A stretch of DNA of 64,000 bases from Mytilus edulis (GCF_963676685.1 NC_092347.1:99076001-99140000); one strand, 5' to 3'; shown: positions 1 to 51,495, counted from the stretch's first letter. The notes: generated from the letters alone by a model not told the origin. A program made the numbers and translations.

Positions 1-108
1 ACCGTCCCATGATCCTTGATTGTAACTATCATAACTGCGGCGAGCACTGGCTAAAGAAACTAACACAGCAACATGAGCAAGCCCGATAACAATTGCAAAT
101 GTGTTCAT
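1..108 (-). CDS. Gene A (partial, runs off the window): first coding exon of a secreted G/N/R/S/W-rich precursor family member
   Basis: Reverse complement reads tttacag|aaaccATG, giving MNTFAIVIGLAHVAVLVSLASARRSYDSYNQGSWDG. Hydrophobic signal peptide; SYNQGSW matches gene B SYNQRSW; same cag|aaaccATG context as gene B. Non-coding exon 1 is ~688-624 with a GTGAGT donor at 623-618. Missed by the ORF track. Confidence 0.85.
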   Translation of the reverse strand, partial: MNTFAIVIGLAHVAVLVSLASARRSYDSYNQGSWDG

Positions 109-699
109 GGTTTCTGTAAAACAAAAAGATACATCAGCGTTATTATACCAAATTAACAATGATAAAGAAATCTTGTGTGTTTTGACGTTATTTTTATGTG
201 ATCCTTATAGATATGAAGCGTTTACTTTGCTATCAATCTATTTCAAAAGAAATTGATACATCTGCTTTAATATCTTAATCTTTTAAACGCGTTTTGATAA
301 ATTGATTCATAAATCAAGTAGAAGATATATGCTTAGTACGAAATGTTTCATGAACGTTTTCCAATTGCAAATATTTGACAAGAGTTATTCTTATTGGCTT
401 TGTTACCTCTTATTGTGAGGAATGCATATAAACTGAATATTTTTATTTTAACATTAATTAAGAATAAAGTTTTTCTTCGCCAGCATTCTTGAACATCTTC
501 GAGATGTATTTGGAATACAACAGAAAGTTTTCTTTGGATCAAATACAATATAAAATCATATTAAAGAGCTTAATTCATATAACTTGTAGATAAATATATA
601 AGAAAAAGCAATGAACAACTCACATGTTTTTTTCTTTTAGAGTATGATGTACTGTAATGGATTGTAAGACACAAATGGATAGAGAACTGAGATAACATT

Positions 700-840
700 C
701 TTCTTTTATACTATTTTGATACAAGGAAATAAATATTGGGGAATAATAAAACTCAAAATAAATCAACTGAACTACGTAGATTTTTTATTATACCATTACA
801 GGTTGTGAAGGTTATGACCAACATGTCAATGTCACTCGCA
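700..840 (-). promoter_or_regulatory. Gene A core promoter
   Basis: TATAAAA at 710-704, TTTCCTT at 729-723, TCAGT initiator-like motif about 20 nt downstream of the TATA start. TACGTAGT and TGACAT..GGTCAT..AACCTT motifs are shared with the paralogs. Confidence 0.65.
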
Positions 841-1289
841 TAAGTAATTTTATGATCACATCTATCATTTACAAATAAAAGGTTCATTATTACGCATTCA
901 CTTTACTAATTATACATCATAAAAACTGCCATAAATAATTTGTAGATTGTGGCATTAACTTTAAGTAAATAAAGACTATTATAAAAGAAAAAAGTTTCAC
1001 TGAACATCAAGTTTAAAAAAATTAATGTTTGAACATAAAGATTTTCTGTGTTTTTTTAATATTTTTTGTTTTATATTAATTACGAGGGTAGACCTACTAT
1101 ATGGGAGACAACTCTTACCCATGTATTTAAAGTCATTTGTATGTTTAACCATAGCAATAATTTCAAAAGTGATCAAGCAATTATGTTGTCTACATTTGAC
1201 TGTGAGAATGATGCAAACTTGTACATGTTACACACCAACAAGTATTACATTAAGGAACTTCTTATTTTTAAGGATTAATAAGCAAGATA

Positions 1290-5593: not shown

Positions 5594-5801
5594 TGACATT
5601 GATTTGTTGATCATTGTCGTAACCTTTACATCATATAACTGTTTATTGATATACGTAGTCTACTTGTGTTATTTTGGTTTTCAAAAATCCCCATTTAGCA
5701 GTGTTTCCTTTAAAAAATAGTATAAAACCGAAATGCTATCTCAGTGTTCTCTATCGCATATCGTATCATTCATCAAATACTTTCAAGAAAAGAAAACACA
5801 G
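5594..5801 (+). promoter_or_regulatory. Gene B promoter and non-coding exon 1
   Basis: TTTCCTT at 5704, TATAAAA at 5721-5727, TCAGT at 5741, donor CAG|GTAAGT at 5801/5802. Confidence 0.7.
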
Positions 5802-6336
5802 GTAAGTTATTTACTTAGTTTGTTTATATCAATTTAGAAAATTTTTACTATCTCAGCTGTTTCAATCTCATATTTATTAGAAAATGATACTTGGTTACTG
5901 CTTTTTCAAATAAATAAATGTCATAACTTTGCTGATTGATATTTCAAATTAAAAAGCGTGATAATAACAACCCTCGAAAGAGCATCGTTTTCCTGTATCA
6001 TTTTTTAGTATTGTTTCACTCATCGTCTTATAGAGATACAGCGGCTCTTTTCACAAAATGCGTTAACAGTAACAAAAATCGTACGTTAAACATTTTTCCA
6101 GAAATCGATTAAAAAGAATACTTAGTTTTATGTACCTTTTTGGAAAACTTAATAATTTGACAAACGTTTTTTGTTGTGTCATATTATTAGCAATGCACAC
6201 TTTTTATTCCAAATTTAAAATTTTTTTCAATGATTTTTATTTGCCCTGTTGTAGCATAAATATTTATGTTGTAGCTTTAATCACAATTAAATTGATAAAG
6301 TATTTAATAATTTAATTTATCCTTTTTTCAGAAACC

Positions 6337-9300
6337 ATGAATACCTTAGTTTGTGTTGTTATGCTTGCTGTGCTGGTAACTTTAGCCACTGCTAACAGTT
6401 ATAATCAACGATCATGGGGTTCACAGGGATCCAGAGTTTTGGGAAGTAGATGGAATAGTAGACAGCTGAATAATGGTTGGAATAGTGGTTGGAATGGTGG
6501 ACGTCTGTCAGGGGGATTAAATGGCGGATATCGAAGTAAGTTATATAATATTTATTCCATTTATCAACAGAGATTAGCAAATGTCCATTATTGTTGGTTT
6601 ATAAACTACAATTTGGGCTTCTTATTCACACATAAGCCACGTTCTTATTTATATGACGTAGGTTGACCAACAAAAGTATACAACCCCCCTTTCATAGATA
6701 TAAGTCATTCATATGAGCAAGTAGTACCCAACATTGCGTCCATTCATAAATTCTGAACAAATTTCAAAATAGTCAATGTTTACTGTATTTTTTTTTATGA
6801 AAGGATGCATGCAAAATATCTAAATTGCTTATTTCTAAAAGTTTACTATTTTTGGACGTTATGTTGCTTTCGTTGTAACTTTTTTCAAATTATACTTCAA
6901 AAGAAGAGGGACGAAAGATACCAGACTCATAAATCGAAAATAAACTGACAACGCCATGGCTAAAAATGAAAAAGACAAACAGACAAAGAATACAACACAT
7001 GACACAACATATAAAACTAAAGAATTAGCAACACGAACCCCACCAAAAAATGAAGTGTAAGCAGATCCTTCTCCACATGTGGCACCCATCGTGTTGCTCA
7101 TGTTATAACAATTTAATGTATATGTAAAAAAGGAATTTTATACTTATTATTATTAGATGAATGAGCGTAAATAGGTTGATATGTTTTATCTACTAACATG
7201 TATGAATGGAGCACCAATATAACTTGACATTTTGCACTTTAAATAATTATAAAATAATTATAAAACATGATATTACTTCTGTAGGGCACAAAAGAGCAGC
7301 TACATATGATCCATACAGAAGCAGTCATTTTGACAGTGGATTAGGACGTTTTGACAGATGGGGGATTAATTCAGGGAGGAGATCTAATTTAGGGTGGGGA
7401 TCTAATTCAGGATGGAGTCAACAAGGTAAGTTTCGATTATGCATCAGATTAGATTTTCTCAGCATCTCTGAACTGTCATATGTCTCATTATGTTTAATTA
7501 TTCTTTTAAATGCACGGCCGACACTCGGCTAACCGAGAGTTTGGTCGGTTAATCTATATTGAGTATGCGGCTATATCGGCGGTTGGTCTGTTAATCGGGT
7601 TGGTTATACGTCTGTTAAGAGTAAAACTCACAATTTAATGTTAAACTCTGTTAAATATACAGATTTTTGCCATATTATGAGAACCACATAAAAAAAAGAA
7701 AAGTGTCTGACAAAATGATATCTATCATAGAACAGTTTCCACCAGTAAAAAAAATGCATAGCCTGCGCAGTTTTAAGTAAAACGAAAAGGCGTCTCGCAA
7801 GTATGTGGTTTTTATGCTTGTACGCATAGCAATATTTTGGATAGACGGCTAAAAAACATTTTTATATATGATTTAAAGGACACAAAATAGTACTTTGGTT
7901 CTAAAAAAATAATTGTCATTGATAAATATTTCATAATTGTTATATAAGTTGAGTAATACCACATTTTAATGAATATTAGGGGACTAAAGTCTGTTAATGG
8001 GTTTATCAATTTAAATCGTGTCAGTTAAGAGTTATTTAGCCACGACAATAGTCTTACTACCTTTAGTTTATATTTTCACATTGAAAAAAATTAGATGTAC
8101 TTGTGACGAAAAAATTACAATACGGTGCAACAGTATCCTTATAGAAAGAGAACTTTAATTTTAATTTTATTTCTTTGCATTTCCTTGAAGGGTATGTCAC
8201 TTCAATATAGCGTTATATGGACTGATTGGCCGCTCGAATTCGCACGAATTTATTATTTACGCCAAGTTATCAATCAGCCTTTTTTTTTTCTGTTCAAAGT
8301 CTGTAACATCTATGAATCTGTCATGTGTTGCAATGCAGCTGGTTAAATTAAGGCTTTTCTACCTCAGGAATAGATTACCTTATGCCGGCATCACACATTG
8401 GCGTATAGACCGGCGTGCACCAAACGTACAGAGAAAATTGACAAAGTCGGTATACGTTAGTTGCATGCCATAGGAACGCTTAGCAATCGTTCAAAGCGCG
8501 TTGCATAAGTTTGTAGTACGTCGACATACAAAGGTAAAATTGAGAAAGGAAATGGGGAATGTGTCAAAGCGACAACAACCCGACCATAGAGCAGGCCAAG
8601 GCCACCAATGGGTCTTCAATGTAGAGAGAAACTCCCGCACCCGTAGGCGTCCTTGATCTGGCCCATTAAAAAATATGTATACTAGATCACACAAGACTAA
8701 CAAAGACCAGAGGCTCCTGACTTGGGACAGGCGCAAAATTGCGGCGGGGATAAACATGTTTATGAGATATCAACCCTCCCCCTATTCCTCTAACCAATGA
8801 AGGAAAGTAAATACGCTTGATGAACGCTACAATCCCAGGAAATTTGTATGCAGCATAAAAAACATACAACATACGCCAACATACGTTTCTAGTACGCCCA
8901 ATACACGCTTAAAGCTCGTTTTGCACACGTTACAAATATGATTGACAGGTTAAATGCATCCAAAATTACTAGCGTATTGGCAGCGTAAATGATTTTGAAC
9001 ACTCCAGTGCTATACGCTGATGTGTGACGCCGGTATTAGTTGTGTTTCCTCAATGCTTTTCAACTTCGTGTTTTATTTGGCCTTTTAAGGACATCCGATA
9101 CAGTTTTTCGATATAATGTCATTTTTATAGTTTTGAAATATGTTGTAGGCCTTCGCGAGTTATAAAATAAAACACAAAATAAAACATAGGTCACCGTGCT
9201 CGTTTTCGAGAAAATTGAGGCTGAAAATTGGGGATATGTGCAATTTTGCAAAAAAGGCAGGCAATGTTATAAAATTTATGGAGCAAATATTCTTCGTCGT

Positions 9301-12300
9301 AAATTATTAAGATCGGGTTCAATTTGAAGCTGTGATAAGTGACAATAAGTAAAAAAAATAATCCCTACACGAATGACTATACAATTATTCAAGCCTTGCT
9401 TAAAATTGCGGACCAGATGCTCAAAGTGGTATTTTTTTAATCCAAAAATATGGAAATAAAGTGTTAATGGAAATGTCATTTTTATCATTTTTTGCATAAA
9501 CTGCATTTTGTCATGCTTTCTCCAAATCTCAAAAAAAATATATATGTCACCGTGCTGGATTCTATGATAAACGCGATTTATCCTAAAAATTGCGTCCCCC
9601 CCCCCCCCCTTTGTCACCTCAACGATAGCGCTAAAGTGCACGACGTCGCTGGCAGACTTTTTCGATGTTATCGCTGCAAATTTCCGGCGACATTTTTCAG
9701 ATGTATATATAAATATTGCTTGTAAAGAGCAACCTATAAATAGGTAATATTGTTTTCGGAAATAAAATCATGTAAGTCATGAATACATCTCTTTGTTTGT
9801 GGTCTAAGTGAGAAATATCGTAAGAAAAGTGATTAATTACTGATGATAATTTTTATGGCTTTTAAAATTAAAGACATTGCAATTTAGAACTTGACATACA
9901 GGTACATGTACTGTACACACTCGTGTATTAACGTATGTTTTAATTTATACCATATGTTGACCTCTAGATGTTTGTTAATTATTTGTTTTGTTTTGTTTGG
10001 TGGGCTGCTGTTTCATTACAATACTCCTTTAAATTCCTCCATTCACGTTTTAATCACTTTTTAGAATGTCACATTAATTCATAAAATTAAACTTTTATTC
10101 GGGTCAATGATAACAATTGAATAAAGTTGGGAGGCTCCTAAACAGTTTAAAATTCACAGTTTTTATAGCTGACTATGCGGCTTTTCTCATTGTTGAAAAC
10201 CGTACGGTGACCTGTAGTTGTTAATTTATGTGTCATGTTGTGTCTCTTGTGGAGAGTTGTCTCATTGGCGATTATACCACATCTTCTTTTTTTTTTTGTG
10301 TCAGAAAACAAAACAAAATCTTATAAAGGAGAATCTTCAATATGCTAAAGGATGCTTTTGTCCCGACAGAGAAACTATACCATAATTATTTCAATTTTTG
10401 ATTTGGCAAAAACGATTGAATTAATAGGGAGAGGACTGGACAAATTACCTATGCGCAATTTCATTGGTAAATTATAACTATATATTGTTTTCACCACAGC
10501 GCGACGCATTGCGGGGTACATAAAATATCGCACGTTCATTCCTCTGTCTGTTCTTCCAGTCCTTATGGTTAATTAGATTTTTTCAAGTATACAATTCTTG
10601 CCAAATTTCCATTAAACTGATATCGTATGGATACGTTCGAAAATCAGTGCATATCAACTATCCTTTAAAAAGAGTTATGTCATTCGAAAATTTTGGAAAT
10701 TGCATTGTATTTGCTGTCATTCCGTCATTTCTCTTATATATTTGTAAATGAAATAAAAAGAACAAAATAAACAGCTCGGAACTACGAGCGCATGATACGC
10801 ATGAAAAAAACCCATAATACATGTTTTAAAACAACACGGAAGGGGGGGGGGAATAATTCAACAAACAAGTATGTGAATTTGCAATAATTTTCTATTATTT
10901 CTGAGATACAGTGCGACATGTGAAAACCATCTCTTTTTTCATAAACTCATTAACTCTAAAAATAAAATTTGAATCATCCTCAAAAAGTATACAGATCTTC
11001 AGACATGTTTACGACGAACAGACGGAAGCCGGACATTTGTATACCATAATACGTCCTGTCAAAATTTTGCATGAAATATTTGCCACTGGACGTTAAACAA
11101 CCAACAATCAATCAATTTATAGGACATAGTCTTGGTATTAAGCTGGCATTTAAAGAAGCATCGTCCTCATATCAAAAATGATAATTGACATGCATTATAT
11201 TAGTAACACCAAAAAGGGTCAGTCATCTCGAGATTGCTAACTATACGATATTTTGTTGAAGATCTCACAGAAACAGTAATGTGTTTTATTTCTTATGGTT
11301 TTATTAGACTGCTATCCTGTTAGAATCAAATGCACTAATATTAATGGTGTAGAAGTTAGATGCTGGAGAAACAGAAATTGGAGCATCGAAAATCCACATT
11401 ATGTTTCTAATTACGGAAAATTACACGCATTACGTCCCGCTAAAAGTGACGTTTTGCGGGCGCGCCAAGAGTTAACTCCCTTGAAACTGTATCGGATGCC
11501 CTTAAACATTTTTTTCGTCACTGATGAGTTTTTCGTAGACGAAACGCGTGTCTGGCGTAAATATAAGGCGTAAATATAAAATTTCAATCCTGGTATCTAT
11601 GAGTATCTCCGGTATGTATTGTCTTTTGAAACTAATATTACTTTGATATTACACTTTTTGAAACCAGTTCTATCAATTTTCAGATTCCATTGTCTAAACT
11701 TATGTTTCATTGTTCATGTGTTGTTTCCATATATTCTAGCCACTAATCTTGAGTCTATCCCTTTATTCAGATAACACCCCATATAGCAATTAAATTATGC
11801 TTGTAATGTCATTCATAACTCTTAACAGACCAATTAACAGACCGAGTTTTATACATCCGACCCATTAACAGACCACATTTTTATCAAAAATTGATTTATG
11901 TCACCAAAATACAGTTTTTCGTGTAGATTTTTCACATATTGATGTTAATATGGTAAACAAACATAATGCCTGTCTTTTTTCGATGTTCAAAATATTGCAT
12001 GCAAGTAAACTCAACCAACTTGTCATTTTTGTGTACATTTTGTGTGTGTAAAATGTGTATAAATTTACTGATGAGTAACTCGCCTTTTCATTTTATAGAT
12101 CGTTTATTGAAGCTAGAAAAAAAAAAATTACACCACTGGATTCAGTACTCCAAATCGTTTTGTCAGACATGAATAGTTTTTATGATATAAATATAATTAA
12201 AAAGTTATACAATGAAACATAATAACCTTGCAATGATTTTCTCGATAACACCTGATTAACAGACTTTAGCCAACCCGATTAACAGACCAACCGCCGATAT

Positions 12301-12703
12301 AGCCGCATACTCAATATAGATTAACCGACCAAACTCTCGGTTAGCCGAGTGTCGGCCGTGAAATGAGAGTTTTGTTTAAGTCATATACTATATATGTATA
12401 CTACAGGAAGTTCACCATTCGATGTTGTAAACTAATTGTTTTTTTAATTTTTAATAGATATTAATCCCATTTTTTTTTTAAAGTTAGGAGTTAAACAAAT
12501 TTACAATCGGTATATTCTCATCATCGACGACATCTTATGCTAGTTTTTCTAACGAATTCTGTTATAGTTGATATCAAAATAATGAAGTGAATGTCAACAA
12601 AATGGGAAAAGATGTAGGCTTTAATTGATTATATTTGTAAACTGTAAAGATATTTCCTTATTTATAAGTTAACAAAAGGTTTTATTATTTTACAGGATAT
12701 TAG
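6337..12703 (+). CDS. Gene B: 115-aa secreted precursor without the expanded repeat (coding exons 6337-6535, 7285-7425, 12696-12703)
   Basis: All introns are phase-1 GT-AG. Protein: MNTLVCVVMLAVLVTLATA-NSYNQRSWGSQGSRVLGSRWNSRQLNNGWNSGWNGGRLSGGLNGGYRRHKR-AATYDPYRSSHFDSGLGRFDRWGINSGRRSNLGWGSNSGWSQQGY*. The last exon is identified by homology to paralog last exons (ttttacag|..tatt ... cgtagatttt..AATAAA at 12771). Confidence 0.85.
8383..9035. mobile_element. PIF/Harbinger-like MITE nested in a retrozyme-like repeat; itself contains a common repeat at ~8533-8812
   Basis: TTA TSD at 8380-8382 and 9036-9038; imperfect ~26-bp TIR tgccggcatcacacattggcgtatag / ctatacgctgatgtgtgacgccggta. The host repeat (gattacctta|g.tgt) resumes after it. 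Confidence 0.7.
9089..11501. mobile_element. Kolobok-like non-autonomous DNA transposon nested in the same host repeat
   Basis: TTAA TSD at 9085-9088 and 11502-11505; 18-bp TIR ggacatccgatacagttt / aaactgtatcggatgccc with 1 mismatch. GG termini fit Kolobok rather than piggyBac (CC). Confidence 0.7.
11516..11557 (+). ncRNA. Minimal hammerhead ribozyme (intact core), sense strand in gene B intron 3
   Basis: cgtca-CTGATGA-gttt(ttcgt)agac-GAAA-cgcgt-GTC-tggcg. Confidence 0.72.
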
Positions 12704-15114
12704 GAAAGCCGAGGACACAAGGAGTACATTTCAAGATATGAACAATCATCCGTAGATTTTTACTTTTTTTAATAAAAATTGTGAATTTACTTCCTTTTAT
12801 AAAAATGAATATGCATGTGTAAATATAAAAAAAAAGATGTGGTATGATTGCCAATGCGACAACTGTCCACAAGATACCAAAATGACACAGACATATACAA
12901 ATATAGGTCAACAGCCTTCAACAATGAGCAAAGCCCATGGCGCATAGTCAGCAGTTAGTAATTTCAAACCTCTAGAAGAAGGGGTAAACTGTAGAAATTT
13001 TAGAACAGGCTCACATTGACAGTTTATAACATCCTAACATTTATTATTTTGTTATAGCGCTTTCATGAGTTTACATTCACAAGCATCGATCATGACTATA
13101 ACACATGGGGGACAAAGGTGTTAGGGAATATGGTCATTCTTATATTATCCCAAATTCATGTATTCAGTTATGATGTTATATTTGTTATTCTCATCGGATT
13201 TTGTCTAATGCTAAGTTCGTTTCTGAGTGTGTTACATTTTTATGTTGTGTCGTCATTCTCTTATATTTAATGCGTTTCCCTCGGTTTTGGTTTGTGACCC
13301 AGATTTAGATGTTTTTCTATCGATTTATGAGTTTTGAACAATGGTATACTACTGTTGCCTTTATTTATGCGGGTATATCAAGCTCATTGTAAACAGTTAA
13401 AGAGTAGACCTTAAAAAAAGCATTCAAGTCAACTTTGAGTAAGGCATCAGTTTTTATAATAATTCATCAATAGAGTTGCAAATATAGGTTTCTGAACATG
13501 TATGTACCTACGCAATGACCAGTAGGCTACTTATACCAAGTTGGGACTTACAGTCTACCAGCGGTGCAATCGATCTTATGAAAATATCTTATATTATTTT
13601 TTGCATCTAACGCTCTTTCCCTTGTAAAAGAAGGACGATAGATACCAGAGAAACAGTCAAACTCATAGATCAAAAATAAACTGACAACGACAGGGCTGAA
13701 AATGAAACACAAACAGACAAATAATAGTATACATAATACACAACATAGAAAACTAAATACTAAGCGACACAAACCCCACCAAAAACTTGGGATGATCTCA
13801 GGTGCTACGGTAGGATCAACACATTCTGCTATAAATTGGCACCCGCCGTGTTATTACAAACCCAGTAAATAGTGTAGGGATACCAAAGGGACATTTAAAT
13901 TCATAATTCGAAAATGAATGTAATTTTAGAGTATCAATTTTTTCCAACTCTGCCACACAAGGGGAGACAAATCAAATAAAGGCAATTTTACAATAGAATT
14001 TGTTAGGAACTAACCTATTTTCAAGTCAGGAATATGACAGTTGTTATCCATTCGTTTGATGTGTTTTGACTTTTGATTTTGCCTTTTGATTTTTGATTTT
14101 CCTTTTTGAATTTTCCTCGGAGTTCAGTATTTTTGTGTTTTTACTTTTTATTATGTAGCAATACAACGGGTCTCGTGATTCCTTTTTTATTTTCTTATCT
14201 GGAACCCTAACATTAGAGCTATCTTCTCATATTTTATCTCATAATTCAATTGTGTTGTTTTCGTTTTCTTGCAGAAAATTGGGTTTTTCATGCATGATCT
14301 ATACAAAATCTGTCAATTTCAATTGTGCTTAACCTGTAGCGTAAAAATAAGTCTCATGACCAATTATTTATATTATTTTTTTTAAATACGTGACATAAAC
14401 TACGTTTTGCAAATTATTAAAAAAATCTATGGATTATAATTTAGATACCCCATCTACCTAAAGACTGTTTCCACTGTTTTAATCTATTGTTCTTATGTTG
14501 TACTGTCCCCGGTTATGGGAGGGTTGATATCTCGCCAACATGTTTAACCCCGCTACACTCTTTATGTATGAGCCTGTCCAAAGACAGTAGCTTGTAAATC
14601 AGTATTTGTGGTTCGTAGATGTGTTACATATTTGTCTTTCGTTCATTTGTTTTACCATAAAATTAGGACGTACGTTTTCTTGTTTGAATTGTTTTACTTA
14701 ATCATTTTCTGGACTTTTATAGCTGACTATTCGGTATGGGCCCTGCTTATTGCGTAAGTTGTGTAAAATATAATTAAAAAACCTCTATGTATGTTTTCTG
14801 CGTCTGAAGTGTGTTTACGGATCCGCCTTAATACGGACGTTCATGGCGAATATTTAAAAGCCAATAATGTATACATCTACATCTGTAGACCTATATGTAT
14901 ATGACCAAGAGGGTAAAAATGAAATCATAAAAATATGTACACTATGTTGTACATATGATCCAGTCTTCTTTCCCAAAATGTTACCTAACGAATAACGTAA
15001 TCATCAGGTTGTACTTAGATGAGCAGCAGAAAGGTTGCGACTTGAATCTGATTACCCTTCCGAACACTTTATATTAGGTACATTTAAAAATTTGGAATTC
15101 TAAACAAATGATCA

Positions 15115-15172
15115 TTTGATATTAAGTTTATGTAAACTTTGTAAAAATAACGATGTATCAAATGGTTATTAT
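15115..15172 (-). pseudogene. Relic of the last (TM4/stop) exon of the nAChR-like gene
   Basis: About 58 nt align to ~54106-54163 with 6 mismatches by my count. Translates IITI*YIVIFTKFT* versus ILTIGCIVIFTNFT*. Confidence 0.7.
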
Positions 15173-16455: not shown

Positions 16456-17987
16456 TCAAATCCAAAGACTTTAAAAAGGCCAAAGTATTTGTGTGATCTT
16501 TTTTTTCTTTATAAGTTTGATGTTCTGATTTTAGTGTCAGTAAAGCCGTGGACTTTCAAAGTTTAAGTAAAATTGAGAATAAAAATGGGGAATGTGCCAA
16601 AGCGAGAACGACCCGACCATAGAGCAGACAACAGCAGAAGGTCACCAACAGGTCTTCAATGTAACGAGAAATTCCCGCACCCGGAGGCGTCCTTCAGCTG
16701 GCCCCTTAACAAATATATACTAGTTCAGTGATAATGAACGCCATGCTAAACTCCAAATTGTACACAAGAAACTAAAAGTTAAAATAGTACAAGACTTACA
16801 CAGGCCAGAGGCTCCTGACTTGGGACAGGCGTAAAAATGCGGCGGGGTTAAACATGTTTGTGAGATCTCAATCCTCCCCCTATACCTCTAGCCAATGCAG
16901 AAAAGTAAACGCATAACAATACGCACATTGAAATTCAGTTCAAGAGAAATGTATATGTCACATTTTTATGTTTGATTTTTTGGGATATTTTTCAATACGT
17001 GTCGGCAATGGGTACCGTTTTTGTTCAGTTTGGTCATTTCCACTTAACTTCTAGTGAATTGTCTTCCGCAATGATATCTTGTTGTTCAGTTTTAGGTATA
17101 AGATATAGGAAGATGAAGAATAAATGCCAATGAGACAACTCTCCATTTAAGTCAAAATTTATAAAACTAAACCATTATAGGTCAAAGTACGGAATTGAAC
17201 ACGAAGCCTTTGGTCACACTGAACAGCAAGCGTCATTATTAATCCCGACATTATATTATACTTATATGGTAATTTTTTATAAGTTTTGACATTTCTTATT
17301 GCTAATGGGCTTTAACTATATCCACTAGTTTTTCTTTTTAATTGTTAGCATTGTTAAATGTTTTAATATAGATTAAGATAATAACACAATGTTGACTTCT
17401 GTATCCCTGGCTCAGTATTTAAACATGTTGCCATTATGTTATTGTGCTAAGGTTATTAGAATCTTAATTTACGGTTTGCTTTTGTAGTTTGTCTATAGAG
17501 TGTCTAGACGCTTTTATGTCTTTCGTTGTTTGTGGTTTTAAAAATAATAAGATTATAACACAATGCTGACTGCCGTGCCATTTTTTTTATTCTTCATTTA
17601 AATATTACAAATTTTAGAACGTGCCACCTTTGCCTGTGACATTATTCATTTTTGTCATTCATTGTTGTATTGATTAATCCTTTCTAGATCGCTTTATTCT
17701 ACTTGTTTATATAAGTATTTGATTTGCATAAATATCTTTAAACAATTTAATCCTGATTTGTATTCTCTTTTGAATTGTGGTAAAACATAAAAGGTAGGGT
17801 AATACATTTCCACAATAAAACCAAATGTAACGCTTCAGTCACATGATGTTACAAGAATATTTAACGAAGGAAATATGTTGCTTATATTGTTTTATTTTAT
17901 TTTAAAAAAGTAATAAAATCTACGAATTGTAACGTTGTATGTACACATGATGTATGGTGGTCCCTTCAGTCCATCTCAGTTTAAATA

Positions 17988-19420: not shown

Positions 19421-20264
19421 GATTCTGAGGGAGAAAAATAACTGATTATTCTAAAACTATCTGATTCAAAGCTTCAAAATGTACGCAAAATTAGATACTG
19501 TAGAATTCAAACAATTATGTCAGAAAAATTAGAACCAAACTGTACCAATAATACTACATTGATGTTATCCATCCGTTTGGTGCATTTTATCATTTGATTT
19601 TGCCATTTGAATTTTAGTGAATTTCTGTTGTAGAATATTCCTCGGAGTTCAGTATTTTTTGTGATTTTTCTTTTTGTTCAGAAACATAACCAGTCAAAAC
19701 AGATAATGATAAATAATATGTAGATATTTATCAAATGCAGTGCATTCAATTGTTAGCACTTGACTATGATTTAAAATTATAGATTTTTTTTTTTTAATTC
19801 AACCTTGCAATGACATGTAGAGTTAATATCAAATTTTTTTAGTCGCATTGGTTCTAGTTTGATATCCATTAGTGACAATTATGTTTTGTCGATCTAAATA
19901 TTCTTAAGAGAGTAATTCTAGTGAGATACGGTGCCCAGACACTACACAAAACATTAATAAAAAACAATTACCGTTAAATTCGATGTTTTCCTTATTAGAC
20001 CAACATTTGTGTTTGAATAAAGGCAACAGTAGTATATAGCTGTTCGAAATTCATAAATTCATTGAGAAAAAACAAATCTGGGTTACAAACTAAAACTGAG
20101 GGAAACCCATCAAATATAAGAGGAAAATATTCCTAATGATTTCGATGAATTAAAACATAAAAATTATTTTTTATTGTCACAAATGTTAAAAAAATCAGTT
20201 TTGAAAAACAATATTTGATTAGTGAAATTCAAAATACAAGCTTGTAATTTACATAAAACTATAC

Positions 20265-37000: not shown

Positions 37001-38099
37001 TCTGAAGAAAGCTGATATACATATACCAGGTTTAAATCAAAGACAACATCGTCTTTTTCTAAAAACAAAAAAAGTTGGTACTCTGTCTATGTAAATATCA
37101 CAAGTGTTTGCTCCGAATATCAATGAACCAGGGGTATGTAAAAAAACATCACGTCTTTTTTTCTGAAAAGGTCCATTGAAAGATACCAGTACCTCGTTGA
37201 TAAATGTTCCGTATCAGCTTCATAAATAATACATGATGGTATAAAAATAAAGAGTATAGGTACCAACGTTGTTTATCATCTTAGTAACATCTCAAATTTT
37301 ATTTAATACCTTTTAGCGTGGCTCTGTATTTGTACATATCGCCATTGTGTTATTGTGTTGTGGTCATTTTGGGTTATGTGGTTTGTCTATAGAGTGTTTA
37401 TACGCCATTTGATCTTTCCTTGTTGACATTGTTAGTTGTTTTAATGGTATTATATCACATTGTTGAAAGGTGTACTCTAATTTTTGTTTGTTTTTCTCAC
37501 ACATTGATGTCAACTAAATGAAACCCTATATGACTGGTGTAGTAAATATGATATAGATATTCAAGTTCCCTGAGTGTTGATGTATCATAAAGTCTCTTGA
37601 GATTTTGACAGGAATCACGTTCCATGTGTTGATTCGTTTACATTTTATGGTAGATTTAACTTAATAAATATTTGAATAGTTTTACAATTAGATCTTGGAT
37701 TTTTTTTCCTTTAATTGCGTTTTGGATTTAAGATATACAATGTAGGAAAAAGTAAAATCTCAAATATACTGAACTACGAGGAAAGTTTTAAAAGGAAAGT
37801 CCCAAATAAAATGGAGAAATCAAAAGTTCAAACATAACAAACGATTGGATAACAACTGCCATATTCCTGACTTGGTATAGTCATTTTCTTAAGGTGGGGG
37901 AGGGGTGACACTCCTGAACAATAAAATCAACTGTAACTTCATTTCAGTCTCATGATTTTTACAGATATTTTCAAGGGAGGAAAATAATGCTGTTTATATT
38001 TATTTCCTTATTTTTAAAAAAGTAATAAAATCTACGAAATGTAACGTTGTATGTACACATGATGTATGGTAGTCCTTCCAGTCAATCTCAACTTAAATA

Positions 38100-39437
38100 T
38101 TCTGTAAAATAAAAACAGTATATTTTATTTATCAGTTACTAAACATAACTTGTTGAATAATATAATTAGTCTTTGACATTATGTTTATTTCAGATACCTA
38201 GTTGATACATTTTTGTCTTGTACCGTTGACATTTTTATTATTCTCGTTTGTGATCCATGTTTTTGCACCATTTACTTGCTTATAAATAAATACCAGAATT
38301 TTATTAAACATGACTACTTTAAAAATTATGTATATGGCATATAAAAACCTATATACTATATGTAAATTTTAACGGTATTGTTGGAAAATATAGAAGTCTT
38401 CACAAAATCTTAAAGAACCCATAATGCGGAAGCATTTTATTAGATATAAAAGTAAGTACTTACACCATCGTGAATGATATCCTGAGTTTGATCTCCATCC
38501 TGAATTGCCACCCAATCTATTAAATCGTCCACTGTCAAAACGATTTCGGGTACTTCCTCTGTTTCCTCTGTATGAAACACGTGGCCTGTGAACAGCTGAT
38601 CTTCTAGATCTGTATTCTACAAAATAACATTTTGAAAATTATCATTTAAACTATTGTTATCCAACAAATATGTTTGAAAAGCCAAAAATTGCTTATCTTT
38701 ACAAATTTGTCTGAACAGATTTTATTATCTATTAAATATATATTTTAGTTGTATGTTACCAAATTAAATTCGTCCGACCAATGACTGTTCTTATTTTTAA
38801 GTAAATAAGTCTAAATATTCTAGAAAAAATCCACATACATGTACATGTAAAAAAAAACATGTTGTTGTTCCGTGTCTTTGTACTATAACAGTTGACCTGT
38901 TTTCCTCGAATTTAGTTTTTTAATCGTATTTATGTTCCTTAAATTGATTTTTGACTATTGAACAGCGGTATACAAGTTTATTTATGTTTATCAATATTGA
39001 ATATCAATGAACTCATTTGAAAGTAAATATTGATAATATCTTACGTCTTTTTCCACTAGTTAAACCTCCATTCTGTTGTCCCCTATTCAATCTTCCGGTC
39101 AATTGTTCATCATTCCATCTTTCGGTCAATCGTCCGTCATTCAATCTTCCAGTCAAATGTCCGTCATTCAATCTTCCAGTCAAATGTCCGTCATTCAACT
39201 TCCGGTCAATTGTCCGTCATTCCATCTTCCGCTCAAATGTCCGTCATTCCATCTTTCGCTCAAGTGTCCGTCATTTAATCCACTGTTTATATGTTCATTA
39301 TTCCAATCTCCGGTAAGTCTAGATCCCCTCAATCCTACTGATCTCCGAGTTGACGGCAAGGTGTTGCTTTGGTAAACACGAGCTGAGCCTAAAGTAACTA
39401 CAGCAGCAAGTCCAATGATTATTGGTAACATATTCAT
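38100..39437 (-). pseudogene. Gene E: family member with 7 nonapeptides and a 1-nt frameshift (exons 39437-39045, 38616-38464, 38101-38100)
   Basis: The coding part of exon 2 is 393 nt, where 394 (421-27) is expected. GGAAG-TTGAAT lacks the A of GGAAGATTGAAT at ~39198, giving TGA at 39197-39195. Exon 3 is intact: QYRSRRSAVHRPRVSYRGNRGSTRNRFDSGRFNRLGGNSGWRSNSGYHSRW. Confidence 0.8.
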
Positions 39438-40530
39438 GGTTCTGTTGGAAAAAAATAATCTATCATATTTAAATAATTCAAAGCAAAGCTTCAAAATATG
39501 TGCACAGATAACGGACGTAAAATAAGATTCAATATGTAATATGAAACGCTTAATTTGAACCATATTGTACTCATACAGTATGATTTTTAAAGCAAATGAA
39601 CATTGATTGAATAAAAAATTACAAATCAAAACAAAAAAAGTCATTATTTATGAAATGCCAAATTGTTAGCACTTGAGTATGATGTAACCTAACATATTTG
39701 TTTCTCAATATAACAATGTAAATACACTTAGAGTTAATTCTAAAATTGTTGAATCGCTGTTTTGATCTGTTATACATTGGGAGCCGTTACGTTTGCTATA
39801 TATTATATATGTATTAATTTAGAATAGAATTTCAGTGAACGATTGAATTAAAGGGAGAGTAAAACACGAAACACAGAAACTATACAATATATAATTTGAA
39901 ACAACTTTCGATAACAAAGCATGAGGTTTTAACCCTAAAATCCGTACTAGATTATAGTTTAAAAATGTTTGTATAAATGTTGCAAATTTATTTTTTTTCC
40001 TAACTTTAAATATTTTTTCAAAAGTAACGCTTGTTATCAGTGACGCCAAGATAAAGTAAATATTATCCATATTGGACCAGAAGTTTTGGTAAACTCATGC
40101 ATAAGTGATACAATACATCGTTAGAAAACAAGGTCACATCAAATTACTATATATTATATACTGGATATTTACTATTATTCGTTAGGTACACATTTCTGTG
40201 GATTCCGTGGGTACTGGGGAACAACAAAATTAAATGTTTTAATTCTTTTAAAAAAATATACGCAAACTTTGCCAAAGCAGCAACGTAAAATATTCATGAA
40301 AATGTAAGTTTTCCTCAATCCATGACAATTGATACCCGCGAATATAAATCAATCCCAAATACATTATGTTATTTGATGGATTTTTGAAAATTAAAACACT
40401 AAGATTGTTGATTTTTTTACCATTAATATCTTAAAGTTCCATCAAACAATTACGAAAATTAATATTTGCTCAGCAAAATTTTAAGTATAAGCTCACATTG
40501 ATAATAAAAGTAAAATAAACAACACTTTAC

Positions 40531-40770
40531 CCGAAACTTGTTTGTTTTTAACGTTTTTCAGATGCTCACGAAGAAAGAATGTAGAGTATTGATGAACCAT
40601 TCTCTTTTTATACAAATTGCAAAGAAGGAAACGTTGTAAATTCGGAAAATTTTAAATCCAAAAATAACACAAACACACTACGTCAGTTGTTTTAATGCAA
40701 ACATTGGTTGGAAAGTTAACCACAATGACCTATATGCCATTCTAATTAGCTTAATGTCAGCACAGGTAAT
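40531..40770 (-). promoter_or_regulatory. Gene E non-coding exon 1 and promoter
   Basis: Donor GTAAAG at 40530; TATAAAAA at 40612-40605; TTTCCTT and the conserved upstream block. Confidence 0.65.
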
Positions 40771-47274: not shown

Positions 47275-47510
47275 TACCTGGGCTGACATTAAGCTAATTA
47301 GAATGACATATAGGTCATTGTGATTACCTTTACAACCAATGAGTGTTTTAAATACATTACGTAGTTTGTTTGTGTAATTTGGGTTTTAAGAATTTTCCGA
47401 ATATTCAACATTTCCTTCTTTGTAATTAGTATAAAAGGAGAATGTTTTATCAATGTTTTATATTCTTTCTAAGTGATTATCTGCAGAACGTTAAAAAGAA
47501 AAACATCCAG
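47275..47510 (+). promoter_or_regulatory. Gene F promoter and non-coding exon 1
   Basis: Conserved block, TTTCCTT at 47411, TATAAAA at 47430-47436, donor CAG|GTATAG at 47510/47511. Confidence 0.7.
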
Positions 47511-48538
47511 GTATAGTGTTGTTTGTTAACTTTTATTCTAAATATGTAAGAATTTTGCAGAACTTTTTTCATAATTGTTTTATTGAACTTTGTTTCAAAC
47601 ACTCGTGACAATAACAACAATCTTAATGTTCTGATTTATACAAAAAGAATTGGATTAATTTATATTCGAAGGTACCAATATTCGTAGATTTAGGAAAACC
47701 TGCGTTATCGTGGATATTTAGTTTCGTTGCCTTGGCAAAGTTTGCATAAATTCCTTTAGAATATTTTTAATTTGTTGAACATTTAAATTTGAGGTTCCTT
47801 ATTACCTTCGAAATCCATGAAAATGTGTATCCAAGGAGAAGAATGTAACATTTATATTTGAGTAATTAGATGTGACCTTGTTTTCTAACCATTTATTGTA
47901 TATAAAGTGAGCATCATTTGACTAGACTTGTGTTCAAATAAGGATAATATTTACTTTATCTTGGCGTCACTCATTACAATCATTGCTTTAAATTTTTATC
48001 TATAGTTAAAAAACAAACCTATTGTAACATAACAAACAAATAACATTTCTAAAATAGAAAGTAAGAATATTAGGGTTCTAAACCCATGCCTTGCCTTCAA
48101 AAGAGATATTATTTCATTTGTTATACAGCTTCAATAGACTGTATTACTCAATTTTTAATGCCCTCTTTCACTAGCATTACTTTTCTAAATTGATATATAA
48201 ATGTAAGATATATTTAATGTATTCATAAAACAGCGATTCAACCATTTTAGAATTACTTCTTCGTGTAATTGTAATGTTATATTGCAGAAACACATATATA
48301 AGGTTACATCAAACTCAAGTGCTAACAATTCTGAGTCATACATGTAGAATTTTTTGTTTTAATTATTATTATTGTATTCGTGCTATAAAATCATACTGTA
48401 TGAGTACAGTTTTTGCTCAAATTAAGCGTTTTATGTGACATATGAACTCTGGTTTTACATATATTTAAATGTGCACATATTTTGAAGCTTTGTTTTGCAT
48501 TTTTTAAATATAATAAATTATTTCTCTCCCTCAGAACC

Positions 48539-50033
48539 ATGAATATGTTACCAATAATCATTGGACTTGCTGCTGTAGTAAGTTTGGGCTCAGCTCGTGT
48601 ATACAACAGCAACACCTTGCCATCAACTCGGAGATCATTAGGGTTGAGGGGATCTAGACTTAACGGAGATTGGAATAATGAACATCGTAACAGTGGATTG
48701 AGTGATGGACAATTGACCGGAAGATGGAATGACGGACAATTGACCGGAAGATGGAATGACGGACAATTGACAGGGAGATTGAATGACGGACATTTGAACG
48801 GAAGATTGAATGACGGACATTTGATCGGAAGATTGAATGACGGACATTTGACCGGAAGATTGAATGACGGACAATTGACCGGAAGATGGAATGATGGACA
48901 ATTGACCGGAAGAAGGAATGACGGACAATTGACCGGAAGATTGAATAGGGGACATCAGGATGGAGCTTTAGATAGTGGAAAAAGATGTAAGACATTAGGA
49001 ACATTTACTTTCAAATGAGTTCATTTATATTGAATATTGATAAACATAAATAAAGTTATAAACCGATGTTTAATAGTCAAAAATCAAAATTCAATTAAGG
49101 GAACATAAGTACGGTTAACAAGCTATATTCAAGGGAAAGACGTCAACTATTATAGTACAAAGACACCGAACAATAACAAATTGTTTTTTACATGTACATG
49201 TATATGATTTTGTCTACACTATTGGGACTTATTCACTAGAGACTAAGAACAGTCATTGGTCGTGCGAATCTAAATTGGTAACATGCAACTAAAATATGTA
49301 TTAAATAGATAATAAAATCTGTTCAGACAAATTTGTAAAGATAAAAAAAATATTTTTAAAAATATTTGTATGAGAACAATAGTTAAGATGATAATTTAAG
49401 AATATTTTTTTTGTAGTATACAGATCTAGAAGATCAGCTGTTCAAAGGTTACGTGTTTCATACAGAGGAAACAGAGGAAGTACCCGAAATCATTTTGACA
49501 GTGGACGATTTAATAGATTGGGTGGCAATTCAGGATGGAGATCAAACTCAGGATATAATTCACGATGGTGTAAGTGTTTAATTCAAAATCAAAACATATG
49601 TTGTATTATCATCTTATTATCTACGATACAAAACATATTTAAGAAGATTTGGTATGAGAGCCAATGCGACAACTCTCGAGTCAAGTCACAATTTGTAAAA
49701 ATAAACCGTTATAGGTCAAAGTACGGTCTTCAACACGGAAAATTGACTCATACCGAACAACAAGCTATTAAAGACCCCAAAATGACTAGTGTAAAACCAT
49801 TCAAACAAGAAAACCAAATGTCTAATCTATATAAAAAAAAAGAAACGAGAAACTCTAATGAACCTCGCCAACAATCGACAACCACTGAACATCAGGTCCC
49901 TGACTTAGGACACTAGACTGATTAAATATAACAATTGGGAATTAGTAACAAACATAACGTCAAAGTATTAATACATCAAGCAAGTTGTGTTTATTATCAG
50001 ATATATAAAATTTTCTTTTTTTATTTTACAGAA
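48539..50033 (+). CDS. Gene F: 200-aa secreted repeat precursor with 9 nonapeptides (coding exons 48539-48986, 49417-49569, 50032-50033)
   Basis: Signal peptide; 9 repeats; GALDSGKR|LYRSRR-SAVQRLRVSYRGNRGSTRNHFDSGRFNRLGGNSGWRSNSGYNSRW; split stop T|AA; AATAAA at 50122. Confidence 0.88.
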
Positions 50034-51495
50034 TATTGAAGTTGAGATGTTCTAGAGAGACAATAAAATATTGTTTGTACATGCAGTGGTATATTCCGTA
50101 GATTTTTATACTTTTTAAAAAAATAAAATTAAAACATATTAAGTATATGACTTTTCCTTTCAAAAATATTCCTAAGAAATATTGTTACCAAAATGATCAT
50201 TGAATTCTGATATACAATATTATTGTTCATGAGTGTTACCAAAACATATACTTAAACCAATACACAATTTCAACAGAAAACCTGGTTAAAACATATTTAA
50301 GATAATTGTACAACTGTCAAAGAAATACTAGTAGATTTAAGAAAACTAAAGAGAGGTTTAAACAATATACCAAAGTATGACTTAAATGAACAATGATACA
50401 GACAAGTATTCACGTACCAACAGTGGTAACAAATATACAGGTTTTGGTGGGGTTCGTATTGCTTAATCTTTAGTTTTATATGTTGTGTCATGTGTACTAT
50501 TGCTTGTCTGTTTCCGTTTTCATTTTTAGCCATGGCGTTGTCAGTATATTTTCGATTTATGAGTTTAACTGTCCCTCTAGTATCTTTCGTTCCGATTTTA
50601 TAGATGTAAGAATCAAACATAAGCAACTGTGCGGAAAATCAAATTGCCTTGCTAAGCATGAACGTACACATACCCATTAGCCATATATGTGTCGACCTTA
50701 TTGCAGCATGAATTTAGTTTGATACAGAAAAGTCATTAATGTTAAAACTTGTGTTCAAAGCTCATTGCCTTCTTCATAGTAGTACTTATTTGTCAGATAA
50801 TGATTATGCCGAAAAAAATAAAAGTCAAACGATACCAAAAGGGACAATCTTAACTTATGTCGAAGAAAATAACCTTTATATAAAACCATGCATAAAAAAC
50901 TTCTATAATCAGGATTCTAATATATGTGATATTCATCCAAATCTAAAGTTTTGCATGTCAATTTCATATAGATTGTTTGTCAACGTATATTTAGCGCATA
51001 CACAATAAGTGTTAAGAATCTCCTACAAAGTTTTCACACTGCACTGCAAAATACTCCGCAATATTAATGCAAAATAAATGCCCTACGGTGACCTACAGTT
51101 GATAATATCTGTGTCATTTGGTCTCTTATGAAGAGTTGTCTCATTGGCAAGCATATTTCATCTGTAAAGTGTTTGGATTATAAACTATCGTAACGTTTTC
51201 ACAGAATCTTATATCAATCTTTTAATTAAATAAAAATCAAACTACAACTAAGAGGCTTGACTAAAAACTACGAGACCAATTTTATACTTTGAAACGAACA
51301 AAGAAACAACAGATTTATACACAATTCACTTTATATCAAATAGTAGTCTTAAACCTCTTACCTCAATTTATCCTTTATCATTTTACTGAATCCGGGGTCG
51401 CAACTGATTTGTTAAACAATTATAACCTTTCAAAAACTTTAATAGAGCACATGCTTCAAAACCAGAGTTTTCGGAAACACTTAGTTCTAAGACAA

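What the first reader, a model, noticed from the sequence alone, without database searches (positions are those of the whole stretch)
1..50130. Six-gene cluster of an unrecognised secreted peptide-precursor family
Seen: six paralogs share one design, with a non-coding exon 1, ATG 4-5 nt into exon 2, phase-1 introns and a tiny last coding exon (gene A is only partly in the window). They encode signal peptide + low-complexity G/N/R/S/W region + furin-type site + C-terminal peptide, with no Cys outside the signal peptide. I cannot match it to a mussel family I know: it has no Cys array (defensin, mytilin, myticin), no Pro-rich core (myticalin), and too little Tyr for mfp-3 or thread matrix protein. 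Inference: a lineage-specific, rapidly duplicating secretory system. Candidate roles are host-defence peptide, peptide hormone/pheromone, or shell/byssus/periostracum matrix component.
Basis: partly seen in the sequence, partly recalled or inferred. Interest (0 to 1): 0.9.

Follow-up and report, generated by a model that had tools for sequence, protein, structure and literature searches.

The report
Mussel-only secreted Arg/Trp-rich pro-protein family
The six genes are real. They belong to a 12-gene, Mytilus-only cluster encoding small secreted, cysteine-free, arginine/tryptophan-rich proteins with a conserved furin-type site; no characterised family matches them, and their job (defence, matrix or signal) is still untested.

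Summary
Window genes A (-), B (+), C (-), D (+), E (-) and F (+) share one design:
- a TATA promoter and a non-coding exon 1;
- an ATG 4-5 nt into exon 2;
- two phase-1 introns;
- a last exon that adds only G-Y-stop (A, B) or the last two bases of the stop codon (C-F).

B and F match the RefSeq "uncharacterized" proteins XP_071166167.1 and XP_071166170.1 exon by exon at 100%.

The cluster is larger than reported: 12 genes on Mytilus edulis chromosome C4, 98.977-99.126 Mb. The scan had already flagged the same family in the neighbouring upstream window (s1-838519, s1-839139).

All hits with a source name in two very large protein searches are Mytilus. There is no Pfam domain, and no similarity to myticalins or mfp-3.

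All 12 genes keep an R-X-(K/R)-R site at the exon 2/3 junction and a conserved core in the C-terminal peptide. Exons are better conserved than introns, and short-type pN/pS is about 0.2. N-glycosylation sequons are absent.

The "low-complexity" part of C-F is a strict nonapeptide array that AlphaFold models as a beta-solenoid.

In C, E and F, a second acceptor 7 nt downstream would read exon 3 as an acidic tail instead.

My leading reading is host defence (about 0.35).

The parts
1..711 (-). Gene A (intermediate type), partial. TATA at about 710, non-coding exon 1 ending at 623, exon 2 from 113 (ATG 108) running off the window edge. Exons 3 and 4 lie just left of the window.
   Evidence: The protein has three W-N-S-G-x-L-x-x-x units, an RRYRR site, a conserved C-terminal peptide, and ends G-Y-stop.
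5721..12790 (+). Gene B (short type). TATA 5721, exon 1 to 5801, exon 2 6332-6535 (ATG 6337), exon 3 7285-7425, exon 4 from 12696 (G-Y-stop), AATAAA at 12771.
   Evidence: Exon 3 is 100% identical to XP_071166167.1 (P0018).
7513..12360 (.). Transposon-like insertion inside intron 3 of gene B. It has 94-nt terminal inverted repeats that are 99% complementary.
17880..20354 (-). Gene C (long type). TATA 20347, exon 1 to 20265, exon 2 19424-18973 (ATG 19420), exon 3 18547-18395, exon 4 from 17989, poly(A) signal 17902.
19005..19263 (-). 27-nt tandem array of gene C (9.6 copies) encoding (L/W)-N-D-G-(Q/H)-L-(T/S/N)-G-R units.
27921..30490 (+). Gene D (long type). TATA 27921, exon 1 to 28002, exon 2 28965-29389 (ATG 28969), exon 3 29814-29975, exon 4 from 30373, poly(A) signal 30464. 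It has only the upstream exon 3 acceptor, because the second AG is mutated to CG.
29126..29349 (+). 27-nt tandem array of gene D (8.3 copies).
37990..40619 (-). Gene E (long type). TATA 40612, exon 1 to 40531, exon 2 39441-39045 (ATG 39437), exon 3 38616-38464, exon 4 from 38101. A 1-nt deletion at about 39199 shifts the frame inside the repeat array.
   Evidence: The E-like protein from another M. edulis assembly (P0006) is intact.
47430..50145 (+). Gene F (long type). TATA 47430, exon 1 to 47510, exon 2 48535-48986 (ATG 48539), exon 3 49417-49569, exon 4 from 50032, poly(A) signal 50121.
   Evidence: Both coding exons are 100% identical to XP_071166170.1 (P0001).
48696..48946 (+). 27-nt tandem array of gene F (9.3 copies).
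49410..49424 (+). Tandem 3' splice acceptors of exon 3 in gene F (TAG|TATACAG|AT), 7 nt apart. The same arrangement occurs in C (exon start 18547 or 18540) and E (38616 or 38609). The first acceptor gives the cationic furin-site frame. The second gives an acidic tail.
   Evidence: GenBank holds both readings of the same M. galloprovincialis gene (VDI60545.1 and VDI60544.1).

Best explanation
These genes form a Mytilus-restricted, tandemly amplified family of small TATA-driven genes. They encode secreted, cysteine-free, N-glycan-free pro-proteins rich in Arg, Gly, Asn, Ser and Trp.

Proposed mechanism:
1. The signal peptide is removed.
2. A conserved R-X-(K/R)-R site, assembled across the exon 2/3 junction, is cut by a furin-type convertase in the secretory pathway.
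3. Cleavage releases an N-terminal module built of W-N-x-G-x-L-x-G-x nonapeptide units. The short genes have one to two degenerate units, A and its upstream relative have three, and C-F have nine to ten in perfect register, predicted to stack as a beta-solenoid.
4. Cleavage also releases a cationic peptide of about 42-57 residues with a family-wide conserved core (Y-R ... H-F-D-S-G ... R-F-[DN]-R-[WL]-G-x-N-S-G).

The products would act outside the cell by multivalent electrostatic and cation-pi binding to anionic surfaces. My leading physiological reading is host defence: glycine/arginine/tryptophan-rich antimicrobial effectors, parallel to but not homologous with the myticalins.

Shown: gene structures, family membership, conservation, selection pattern, motif conservation.
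Inferred: secretion, cleavage, fold, and the physiological role.
For: Structure and reality of the genes:
- establish the gene structures.
- The RefSeq proteins match exons of B and F at 100%.
- Exons 2 and 3 are 88-96% identical between the long paralogs, against 80-87% for intron 2 and 55-82% for intron 1.
- In the short type, pN/pS is 0.19 (N-part) and 0.20 (C-part), lowest in the annotated frame.

Secretion and processing:
- The N-termini look like signal peptides, ending A-x-A or G-S-A.
- There are zero N-x-S/T sequons in ten proteins, where shuffles give about 24 in total.
- R-X-(K/R)-R sits at the same junction in all 12 genes.

Host-defence reading:
- The first three exons follow the same plan as the myticalins, the only linear Cys-free AMPs known in Mytilus. 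That plan is a non-coding exon 1, an ATG at the start of exon 2, signal peptide plus cationic part plus (G)KR in exon 2, then a phase-1 intron (PMC5577615; PMC12294457).
- The family is a lineage-restricted tandem cluster. One copy is broken here but intact in another assembly.
- Net charge is +11 to +17. Arg is almost the only basic residue, and Trp is 3-7%.
- The second-acceptor reading would give the anionic tail typical of mussel AMP precursors.
Against: - No expression, peptide or activity data could be obtained.
- Short-type copies evolve under purifying selection rather than the diversifying selection usual for mussel AMPs.
- By my own count of the sequences, hydrophobic content of the peptides is only about 23%.
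- The group that mined Mytilus transcriptomes for AMPs states that no glycine-rich AMP is known in any bivalve (PMC12294457). This family is therefore not prominent in the immune tissues they studied, or was overlooked.
- There is no sequence similarity to myticalins, and a myticalin-C-like gene lies on another chromosome (C7).
- Conservation of a specific core with His and Asp fits a ligand or a structural contact better than a membrane-active peptide.
Confidence: 0.35

Rival explanations
1. The products are structural, adhesive or coacervating matrix proteins of byssus, periostracum or shell. Small Arg/Trp/Tyr 'sticker' and Gly/Ser/Asn 'spacer' polypeptides would be made in bulk from many near-identical genes. 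They would be processed by a convertase as some bivalve matrix proteins are, and would act through cation-pi and electrostatic cohesion.
For: - Composition resembles mfp-3 (G, N, R, W, Y), and the pieces are about 5 kDa.
- There are six near-identical short-type copies under purifying selection, which suggests a dosage need.
- The genes have strong TATA promoters, with a promoter module shared across the family.
- The mfp-3 genes of this genome form a similar cluster of about 10 genes.
- Foot-gland tissue is probably sampled less often, which would explain the silence in the literature. This point is an inference.
Against: - Tyr is only 4-5% against roughly 20% in mfp-3 (the mfp-3 figure is from my own knowledge), so little DOPA chemistry is possible.
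- There is no homology to mfp-3 (hhalign probability 1.1%), and mfp-3 sits on a different chromosome (C5).
- No proteomic paper holds the peptide strings or the accessions.
Confidence: 0.28
2. The genes encode precursors of a signalling peptide (hormone or pheromone). In this reading the conserved peptide of about 26 residues between the R-X-(K/R)-R site and a conserved G-R-R in the short and intermediate genes is released and amidated. Alternatively, as note s1-838914 proposed, the nonapeptide array of C-F yields many heptapeptide amides.
For: - The most conserved stretch of the family lies between two processing motifs. W-G-I-N-S-G-R-R is kept in the short and intermediate genes and in their orthologues.
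- Every nonapeptide ends G-R.
- G-K-R ends exon 2 of C-F.
Against: - G-R-R is absent from C-F.
- Position 7 of the nonapeptide, the would-be amidated C-terminus, is its most variable position, while N2, G4, L6 and G8 are invariant.
- The single Arg has no basic residue at P4, P6 or P8, and is often followed by Leu. This does not fit the usual rules for monobasic cleavage (established knowledge, not tested here).
- The array is modelled as a folded beta-solenoid.
- Twelve tandem copies confined to one genus are unusual for a neuropeptide gene.
Confidence: 0.15
3. The long-type proteins are surface-binding beta-solenoids that bind ice, calcium carbonate or a polysaccharide. The stacked nonapeptide units would present regular rows of Thr/Ser, Gln/His and Asn/Asp.
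For: - AlphaFold2 models residues about 40-137 as 7-residue strands with 2-residue turns, at pLDDT 70-80.
- VIA-align matches beta-helices: TibA Z 11.2, pentapeptide-repeat proteins Z about 10-10.8, the Ca-dependent antifreeze beta-helix 3p4g Z 9.5, and RTX domains Z 8.0-8.3.
- The array has a 9-residue period with invariant Gly, Asn, Asp and Leu.
- Ice-binding activity has been reported in M. edulis but has no identified gene (bioRxiv 10.1101/2021.08.30.458284).
Against: - The model comes from a single sequence of a perfect repeat. Such Z values are common among repeat folds (note).
- Foldseek found nothing significant.
- The RTX Pfam model does not match.
- The short-type genes lack the array, yet they are the conserved majority of the family.
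Confidence: 0.07

Closest known systems
Myticalins (linear cationic AMPs of Mytilus; PMC5577615, PMC12294457)
   Same: - Genus-restricted tandem gene cluster.
- Non-coding exon 1, with the ATG at the very start of exon 2.
- Exon 2 carries the signal peptide, the cationic Cys-free part and a (G)KR-type site, followed by a phase-1 intron.
- Pseudogene copies occur.
- With the second acceptor, C, E and F would also gain an anionic C-terminal extension.
   Different: - No detectable sequence similarity (the profile search found only family members and one chance hit, P0016).
- Pro 0-1% instead of Pro-rich.
- Four exons instead of three.
- In the RefSeq frame the C-terminal part is cationic and follows a furin site.
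- The cluster lies on C4. A myticalin-C-like gene lies on C7.
- Short-type copies are under purifying selection.
Mussel foot protein 3 (mfp-3, UniProt Q9GUX8 as printed in PMC9287526)
   Same: - Small, secreted and strongly cationic.
- Rich in Gly, Asn, Arg and Trp, with G-W-N-x-G-W-like motifs.
- Encoded by a multi-copy cluster (about 10 copies on C5).
   Different: - No homology (hhalign probability 1.1%).
- Tyr 4-5% rather than about 20%.
- Almost no Lys or Pro.
- The mature mfp-3 peptide lies in a single last exon.
- Mfp-3 has no internal furin site and no nonapeptide array.
RTX / beta-roll nonapeptide repeats and other beta-solenoids
   Same: - 9-residue period.
- Invariant Gly, an Asn-Asp turn and one invariant aliphatic residue per unit.
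- The predicted solenoid superposes on beta-helices.
   Different: - The consensus (L/W)NDG(Q/H)LTGR is not GGxGxDxUx.
- There is no Pfam HemolysinCabind match.
- This is an animal secreted protein.
- The fold and any Ca2+ binding are untested.
Multi-copy amidated neuropeptide precursors (FMRFamide type)
   Same: - Signal peptide followed by tandem short units, each ending Gly-Arg.
- Further dibasic sites downstream.
   Different: - There are no spacers between the units.
- Only a single Arg separates the units.
- The would-be C-terminal residue is the most variable position.
- The family has 12 genes and is confined to one genus.

Membership tests
Myticalin | Exon 1 holds only 5'UTR, and the ATG is at the 5' end of exon 2. 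| tested here: met
   compared with the description in PMC5577615.
Myticalin | Exon 2 holds the signal peptide, the cationic peptide and a dibasic site, followed by a phase-1 intron. | tested here: met
   Exon 2 ends ...G-K-R (C-F) or ...[YH]-R (A, B). Intron 2 is phase 1.
Myticalin | Three exons, with an anionic C-terminal extension after the dibasic site. | tested here: not met
   There are four exons. In the RefSeq frame the C-terminal part has net charge +2 to +8. An acidic tail arises only with the second acceptor of C, E and F.
Myticalin | Detectable sequence similarity to myticalin precursors. | tested here: not met
   The hhalign of the family profile against the myticalin-C-like exon 2 of this genome gives probability 0.6%. 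The profile search of 1.84 billion representatives returned only family members and one chance hit (P0016).
Myticalin | Pro/Arg-rich mature peptide. | tested here: not met
   0-2 Pro per mature protein.
Myticalin | Gill-specific expression and antimicrobial activity. | not testable with these tools
mfp-3 | Sequence homology to mfp-3. | tested here: not met
   hhalign probability 1.1% over 10 columns.
mfp-3 | About 20 mol% Tyr/DOPA. | tested here: not met
   4-5 Tyr per mature protein of 92-181 residues.
mfp-3 | Location in the mfp-3 gene cluster. | tested here: not met
   The mfp-3 copies lie at C5:15.98-16.12 Mb. This family lies at C4:98.98-99.13 Mb.
Furin / proprotein-convertase substrate | An R-X-(K/R)-R motif in a secretory protein, conserved among relatives. 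| tested here: met
   RHKR, RYRR or RSRR sits at the exon 2/3 junction in 12 of 12 genes and in the orthologues.
Furin / proprotein-convertase substrate | Actual cleavage at the site. | not testable with these tools
   This needs mass spectrometry or an in vitro digestion.
Multi-copy amidated neuropeptide precursor | The C-terminal residues of the repeated peptide are the conserved ones. | tested here: not met
   Position 7 (T/S/N/I) is among the most variable positions of 25 units (four residue types, like position 1). N2, G4, L6 and G8 are invariant.
RTX beta-roll (PF00353) | GGxGxDxUx consensus recognised by the Pfam model. | tested here: not met
   No Pfam match at E <= 1 apart from a chance TRAM hit.
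Beta-solenoid repeat protein (fold class) | Repeat units stack as a regular beta-helix. | tested here: inconclusive
   The AF2 single-sequence model has pLDDT 70-80 over the array. VIA-align gives Z 11.2-8 to beta-helices, but Foldseek finds nothing significant.

The most novel reading that the evidence does not exclude
The long-type genes (C-F) would encode an animal secreted beta-solenoid built from a new nonapeptide unit, (L/W)NDG(Q/H)LTGR. Their exon 3 would be a dual-frame exon. Two acceptors 7 nt apart would attach either a furin-released cationic peptide or, straight after G-K-R, an anionic pro-region like those of mussel AMP precursors. One gene would then give products of opposite charge. 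The solenoid could be the unidentified ice-binding or mineral-binding factor of intertidal Mytilus.
Probability: 0.15. Interest if true: 0.75.

Novelty: new variant of a known kind. Interest (0 to 1): 0.5.

Why it matters
Mussels are a model for lineage-specific secreted effectors, both antimicrobial peptides and adhesives. This is a clean, well-bounded 12-gene family with no characterised relative.

If its products are antimicrobial, they would be the first glycine-rich AMPs reported in a bivalve. PMC12294457 states that none is known.

If they are matrix proteins, they would be DOPA-poor cousins in composition of mfp-3, of interest for wet adhesion and coacervation.

The strict nonapeptide array offers a new small repeat fold to test. 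The tandem acceptors offer a simple case of one exon read in two frames. All of these points can be tested directly with existing mussel RNA-seq data and a few synthetic peptides.

Tried and rejected

Searches that found nothing:
- Full-text searches for eight-residue strings of the proteins, for the RefSeq name and for the accessions all returned zero papers.
- Pfam gave no domain.
- The ESM Atlas gave no usable hit.
- Foldseek against PDB gave nothing at E <= 0.001.
- The promoter DNA and the conserved promoter motif occur essentially only inside this cluster. No co-regulated known gene family could be found that way.
- The acidic alternative tail has no relatives outside the family.

Hits judged to be chance:
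- The PDB sequence hit to the Spt5 C-terminal repeat (T-P-A-W-N-S-G-S-K nonapeptides; E 2e-5) is a chance resemblance between two nonapeptide repeats. Spt5 is a nuclear protein, so I rejected it.
- The 1464-aa sea-spider 'cuticle protein' hit (P0016, E 4e-4) reflects low-complexity composition.

Inconclusive analysis:
- I tried to settle which exon 3 frame C-F use. pN/pS is 1.15 (cationic frame), 0.47 (acidic frame) and 0.38 (a frame full of stops). Of 25 variable sites, 11 fall on the third codon position of the acidic frame and 5 on the third position of the cationic frame. The counts are too few to decide.

Procedure:
- Spliced proteins were joined only inside local scripts, to read the frames.
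Searches used exon references or the database proteins P0001 and P0018, which equal the spliced models.

Full report
**Where the window is.** The window is G000:C4:99076001-99140000. Contig C4 is 100,079,844 bases long. This is the same length as the Mytilus edulis contig that carries the RefSeq protein XP_071166170.1.

**Checking the observation.**
- A self-comparison shows four closely related units, at about 17.8-19.5 kb (-), 28.2-30.8 kb (+), 37.6-40.2 kb (-) and 47.9-49.6 kb (+). They are 76-86% identical over 1.1-2.6 kb.
- TBLASTN with the exon peptides adds a divergent copy at 6.3-7.5 kb (+), and the start of another at 108-7 (-).
- I read the sequence and checked it by script. Every gene has the same plan:
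  - a TTTCCTT...TATAAAAG promoter;
  - a non-coding exon 1 whose last 51-53 nt (counted from 30 nt past the TATA box) end in a GT donor; the start site itself was not mapped;
  - an acceptor followed 4-5 nt later by the ATG;
  - a phase-1 donor right after a basic site;
  - an exon 3 of 141-162 nt, ending in phase 1 again;
  - a last exon beginning (A/G)ATATT, which supplies either G-Y-stop (A, B) or only the AA of a T|AA stop (C-F), followed by AATAAA.
- The exon translations of F and B are 100% identical to XP_071166170.1 (200 aa) and XP_071166167.1 (115 aa).
- Gene B's intron 3 is 5.3 kb long because it holds an element with 94-nt inverted ends.
- Gene E has a 1-nt deletion inside the repeat array. 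An E-like protein from another M. edulis assembly is intact (P0006). The deletion is therefore an allele or an assembly error.

**The family is larger than six genes.**
- Searching the whole assembly exon by exon finds only the four long-type copies.
- It finds eight short or intermediate copies, six of them upstream at C4:98.977-99.035 Mb.
- I modelled those copies. There are five more intact short genes (121 aa), and one intermediate gene like A.
- The total is 12 genes in about 150 kb, 11 intact in this assembly.
- In the window they sit as three head-to-head pairs: A/B, C/D and E/F.
- Earlier first-reader notes on the neighbouring window (s1-838519, s1-839139) had flagged the same family.

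**What the proteins look like.**
- After a 19-22-residue signal-like N-terminus, the mature proteins contain no Cys, at most two Pro, and Arg as almost the only basic residue.
- Gly is 17-19%, Arg 13-17%, Asn 10-13%, Ser 9-19% and Trp 3-7%. Net charge is +11 to +17.
- The three subtypes align convincingly along their whole length.
- All share an R-X-(K/R)-R site at the exon 2/3 junction: RHKR, RYRR or RSRR.
- All share a conserved core in the C-terminal peptide.
- The N-terminal part is built from a W-N-x-G-x-L-x-G-x unit. The short genes have one or two degenerate units, A and its upstream relative have three, and C-F have nine to ten in perfect register.
- In 25 units, N2, G4, L6 and G8 never vary. 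D3 and R9 vary once each. Position 7 is the most variable.
- None of ten family proteins has a single N-x-S/T sequon, although shuffled sequences give about 24 in total. This fits proteins that pass through the secretory pathway and must stay unglycosylated.

**Evidence of function from conservation.**
- Between the long paralogs, exon 2 is 90-95% identical and exon 3 is 88-96%. Intron 2 is 80-87% and intron 1 is 55-82%.
- In the six short copies, pN/pS is 0.19 for the N-part and 0.20 for the C-part. In both cases this is clearly the lowest of the three frames.
- A proximal promoter of about 170 bp is alignable across all subtypes, although intron 1 is not. It contains an AGCCAATGACATTGACAT-N-TTGGTCA block, TACGTAGT and the TATA box. 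The motif is essentially private to the cluster.

**An open point: the frame of exon 3 in C-F.**
- C, E and F have two acceptors 7 nt apart (TAG|(A/T)ATACAG|AT). D has only the first.
- The first acceptor gives the furin site and the cationic peptide. This is the RefSeq model, and the frame homologous to the short genes, where the other frames are closed.
- The second acceptor gives, directly after G-K-R, an acidic tail of about 50 residues.
- GenBank holds both readings for the same M. galloprovincialis gene (VDI60545.1 cationic, VDI60544.1 acidic). That annotation refined alternatively spliced exons from transcript alignments (PMC7653742).
- Substitution patterns among the four copies do not decide the question.
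- The acidic frame has a stop in C, and the acceptor it needs is missing in D. The cationic frame has no defect in any copy.
- I therefore take the cationic frame as the main product, and the acidic one as a possible isoform.

**Fold.**
- AlphaFold2 on XP_071166170.1 alone gives low confidence for the signal peptide and for the C-terminal peptide.
- It gives pLDDT 70-80 for the array, as eleven strands of 6-8 residues, mostly 7, separated by 2- to 3-residue turns.
- Foldseek finds nothing significant.
- A full VIA-align scan matches beta-helices over 107-135 residues at 2.6-3.8 A: TibA Z 11.2, pentapeptide-repeat proteins Z about 10-10.8, a Ca-dependent antifreeze beta-helix Z 9.5, and RTX domains Z 8.0-8.3.
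- This is a moderate prediction from a single sequence of a perfect repeat.
- The short-type protein has no confident fold beyond the signal helix.

**Comparison with known families.**
- Only Mytilus proteins match, all named 'uncharacterized' or 'hypothetical', plus one unlabelled Logan protein (P0014).
- There is no Pfam domain.
- Myticalins share the plan of the first three exons but not the sequence. A myticalin-C-like gene of this genome lies on C7, and its exon 2 gives hhalign probability 0.6% against the family profile.
- Mfp-3 shares composition but not sequence (probability 1.1%). Its cluster is on C5, and its gene plan differs.
- The array does not behave like a multi-copy amidated peptide precursor.

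**Verdict.**
- This is a real, conserved, genus-restricted family of secreted pro-proteins that look convertase-processed. It is not described in the literature I could search.
- Its design is familiar (signal peptide, cationic low-complexity part, basic cleavage site), so I class it as a new variant of a known kind.
- My ranking of roles is host defence (about 0.35), matrix or adhesive (about 0.28), signalling peptide (about 0.15), and surface-binding solenoid (about 0.07).

Noticed in passing
window 49410-49424 (also 18547/18540 and 38616/38609): Exon 3 of C, E and F has tandem AG acceptors 7 nt apart, and is open in two frames. One frame gives a cationic peptide after RSRR. The other gives an acidic tail after GKR. 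Both readings exist as GenBank proteins of one M. galloprovincialis gene.
   Followed up: partly
window 7513-12360: An element with 94-nt terminal inverted repeats (99% complementary) sits inside intron 3 of gene B and stretches that intron to 5.3 kb.
   Followed up: partly
window 20777-21741: A 55-bp tandem array of 17.5 copies (91% matches) lies about 400 bp upstream of gene C's promoter.
   Followed up: no
window 55000-60200 (- strand): Exons of a Cys-loop ligand-gated ion-channel gene. They match Neur_chan_LBD (E 2.5e-24) and Neur_chan_memb (E 3.4e-14). The gene is unrelated to the family.
   Followed up: partly
window 27740-28002, 47250-47510, 20530-20265, 40790-40531, 5540-5801, 890-623: A proximal promoter of about 170 bp is conserved across all subtypes. 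It holds a CCAAT-like box fused to a TGACAT-N-TTGGTCA near-palindrome, a TACGTAGT box and TTTCCTT-TATAAAAG. The 22-nt motif is almost private to this cluster in the whole genome.
   Followed up: partly
window 28234-32088 and 40173-36172: Genes D and E lie tail to tail in a large inverted duplication. The arms are about 3.9 kb long and 85-88% identical, around a spacer of about 4 kb.
   Followed up: no
P0001 residues 46-148: The nonapeptide array gives a phmmer hit (E 2e-5) to the Spt5 C-terminal nonapeptide repeat (T-P-A-W-N-S-G-S-K). I judge this a chance likeness between two 9-residue W-N-x-G repeats.
   Followed up: yes
G000:C5:15.98-16.12 Mb (L055-L064): At least ten mfp-3-like gene copies form a tandem/inverted cluster on another chromosome. 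One copy (L058) has an in-frame TGA.
   Followed up: no
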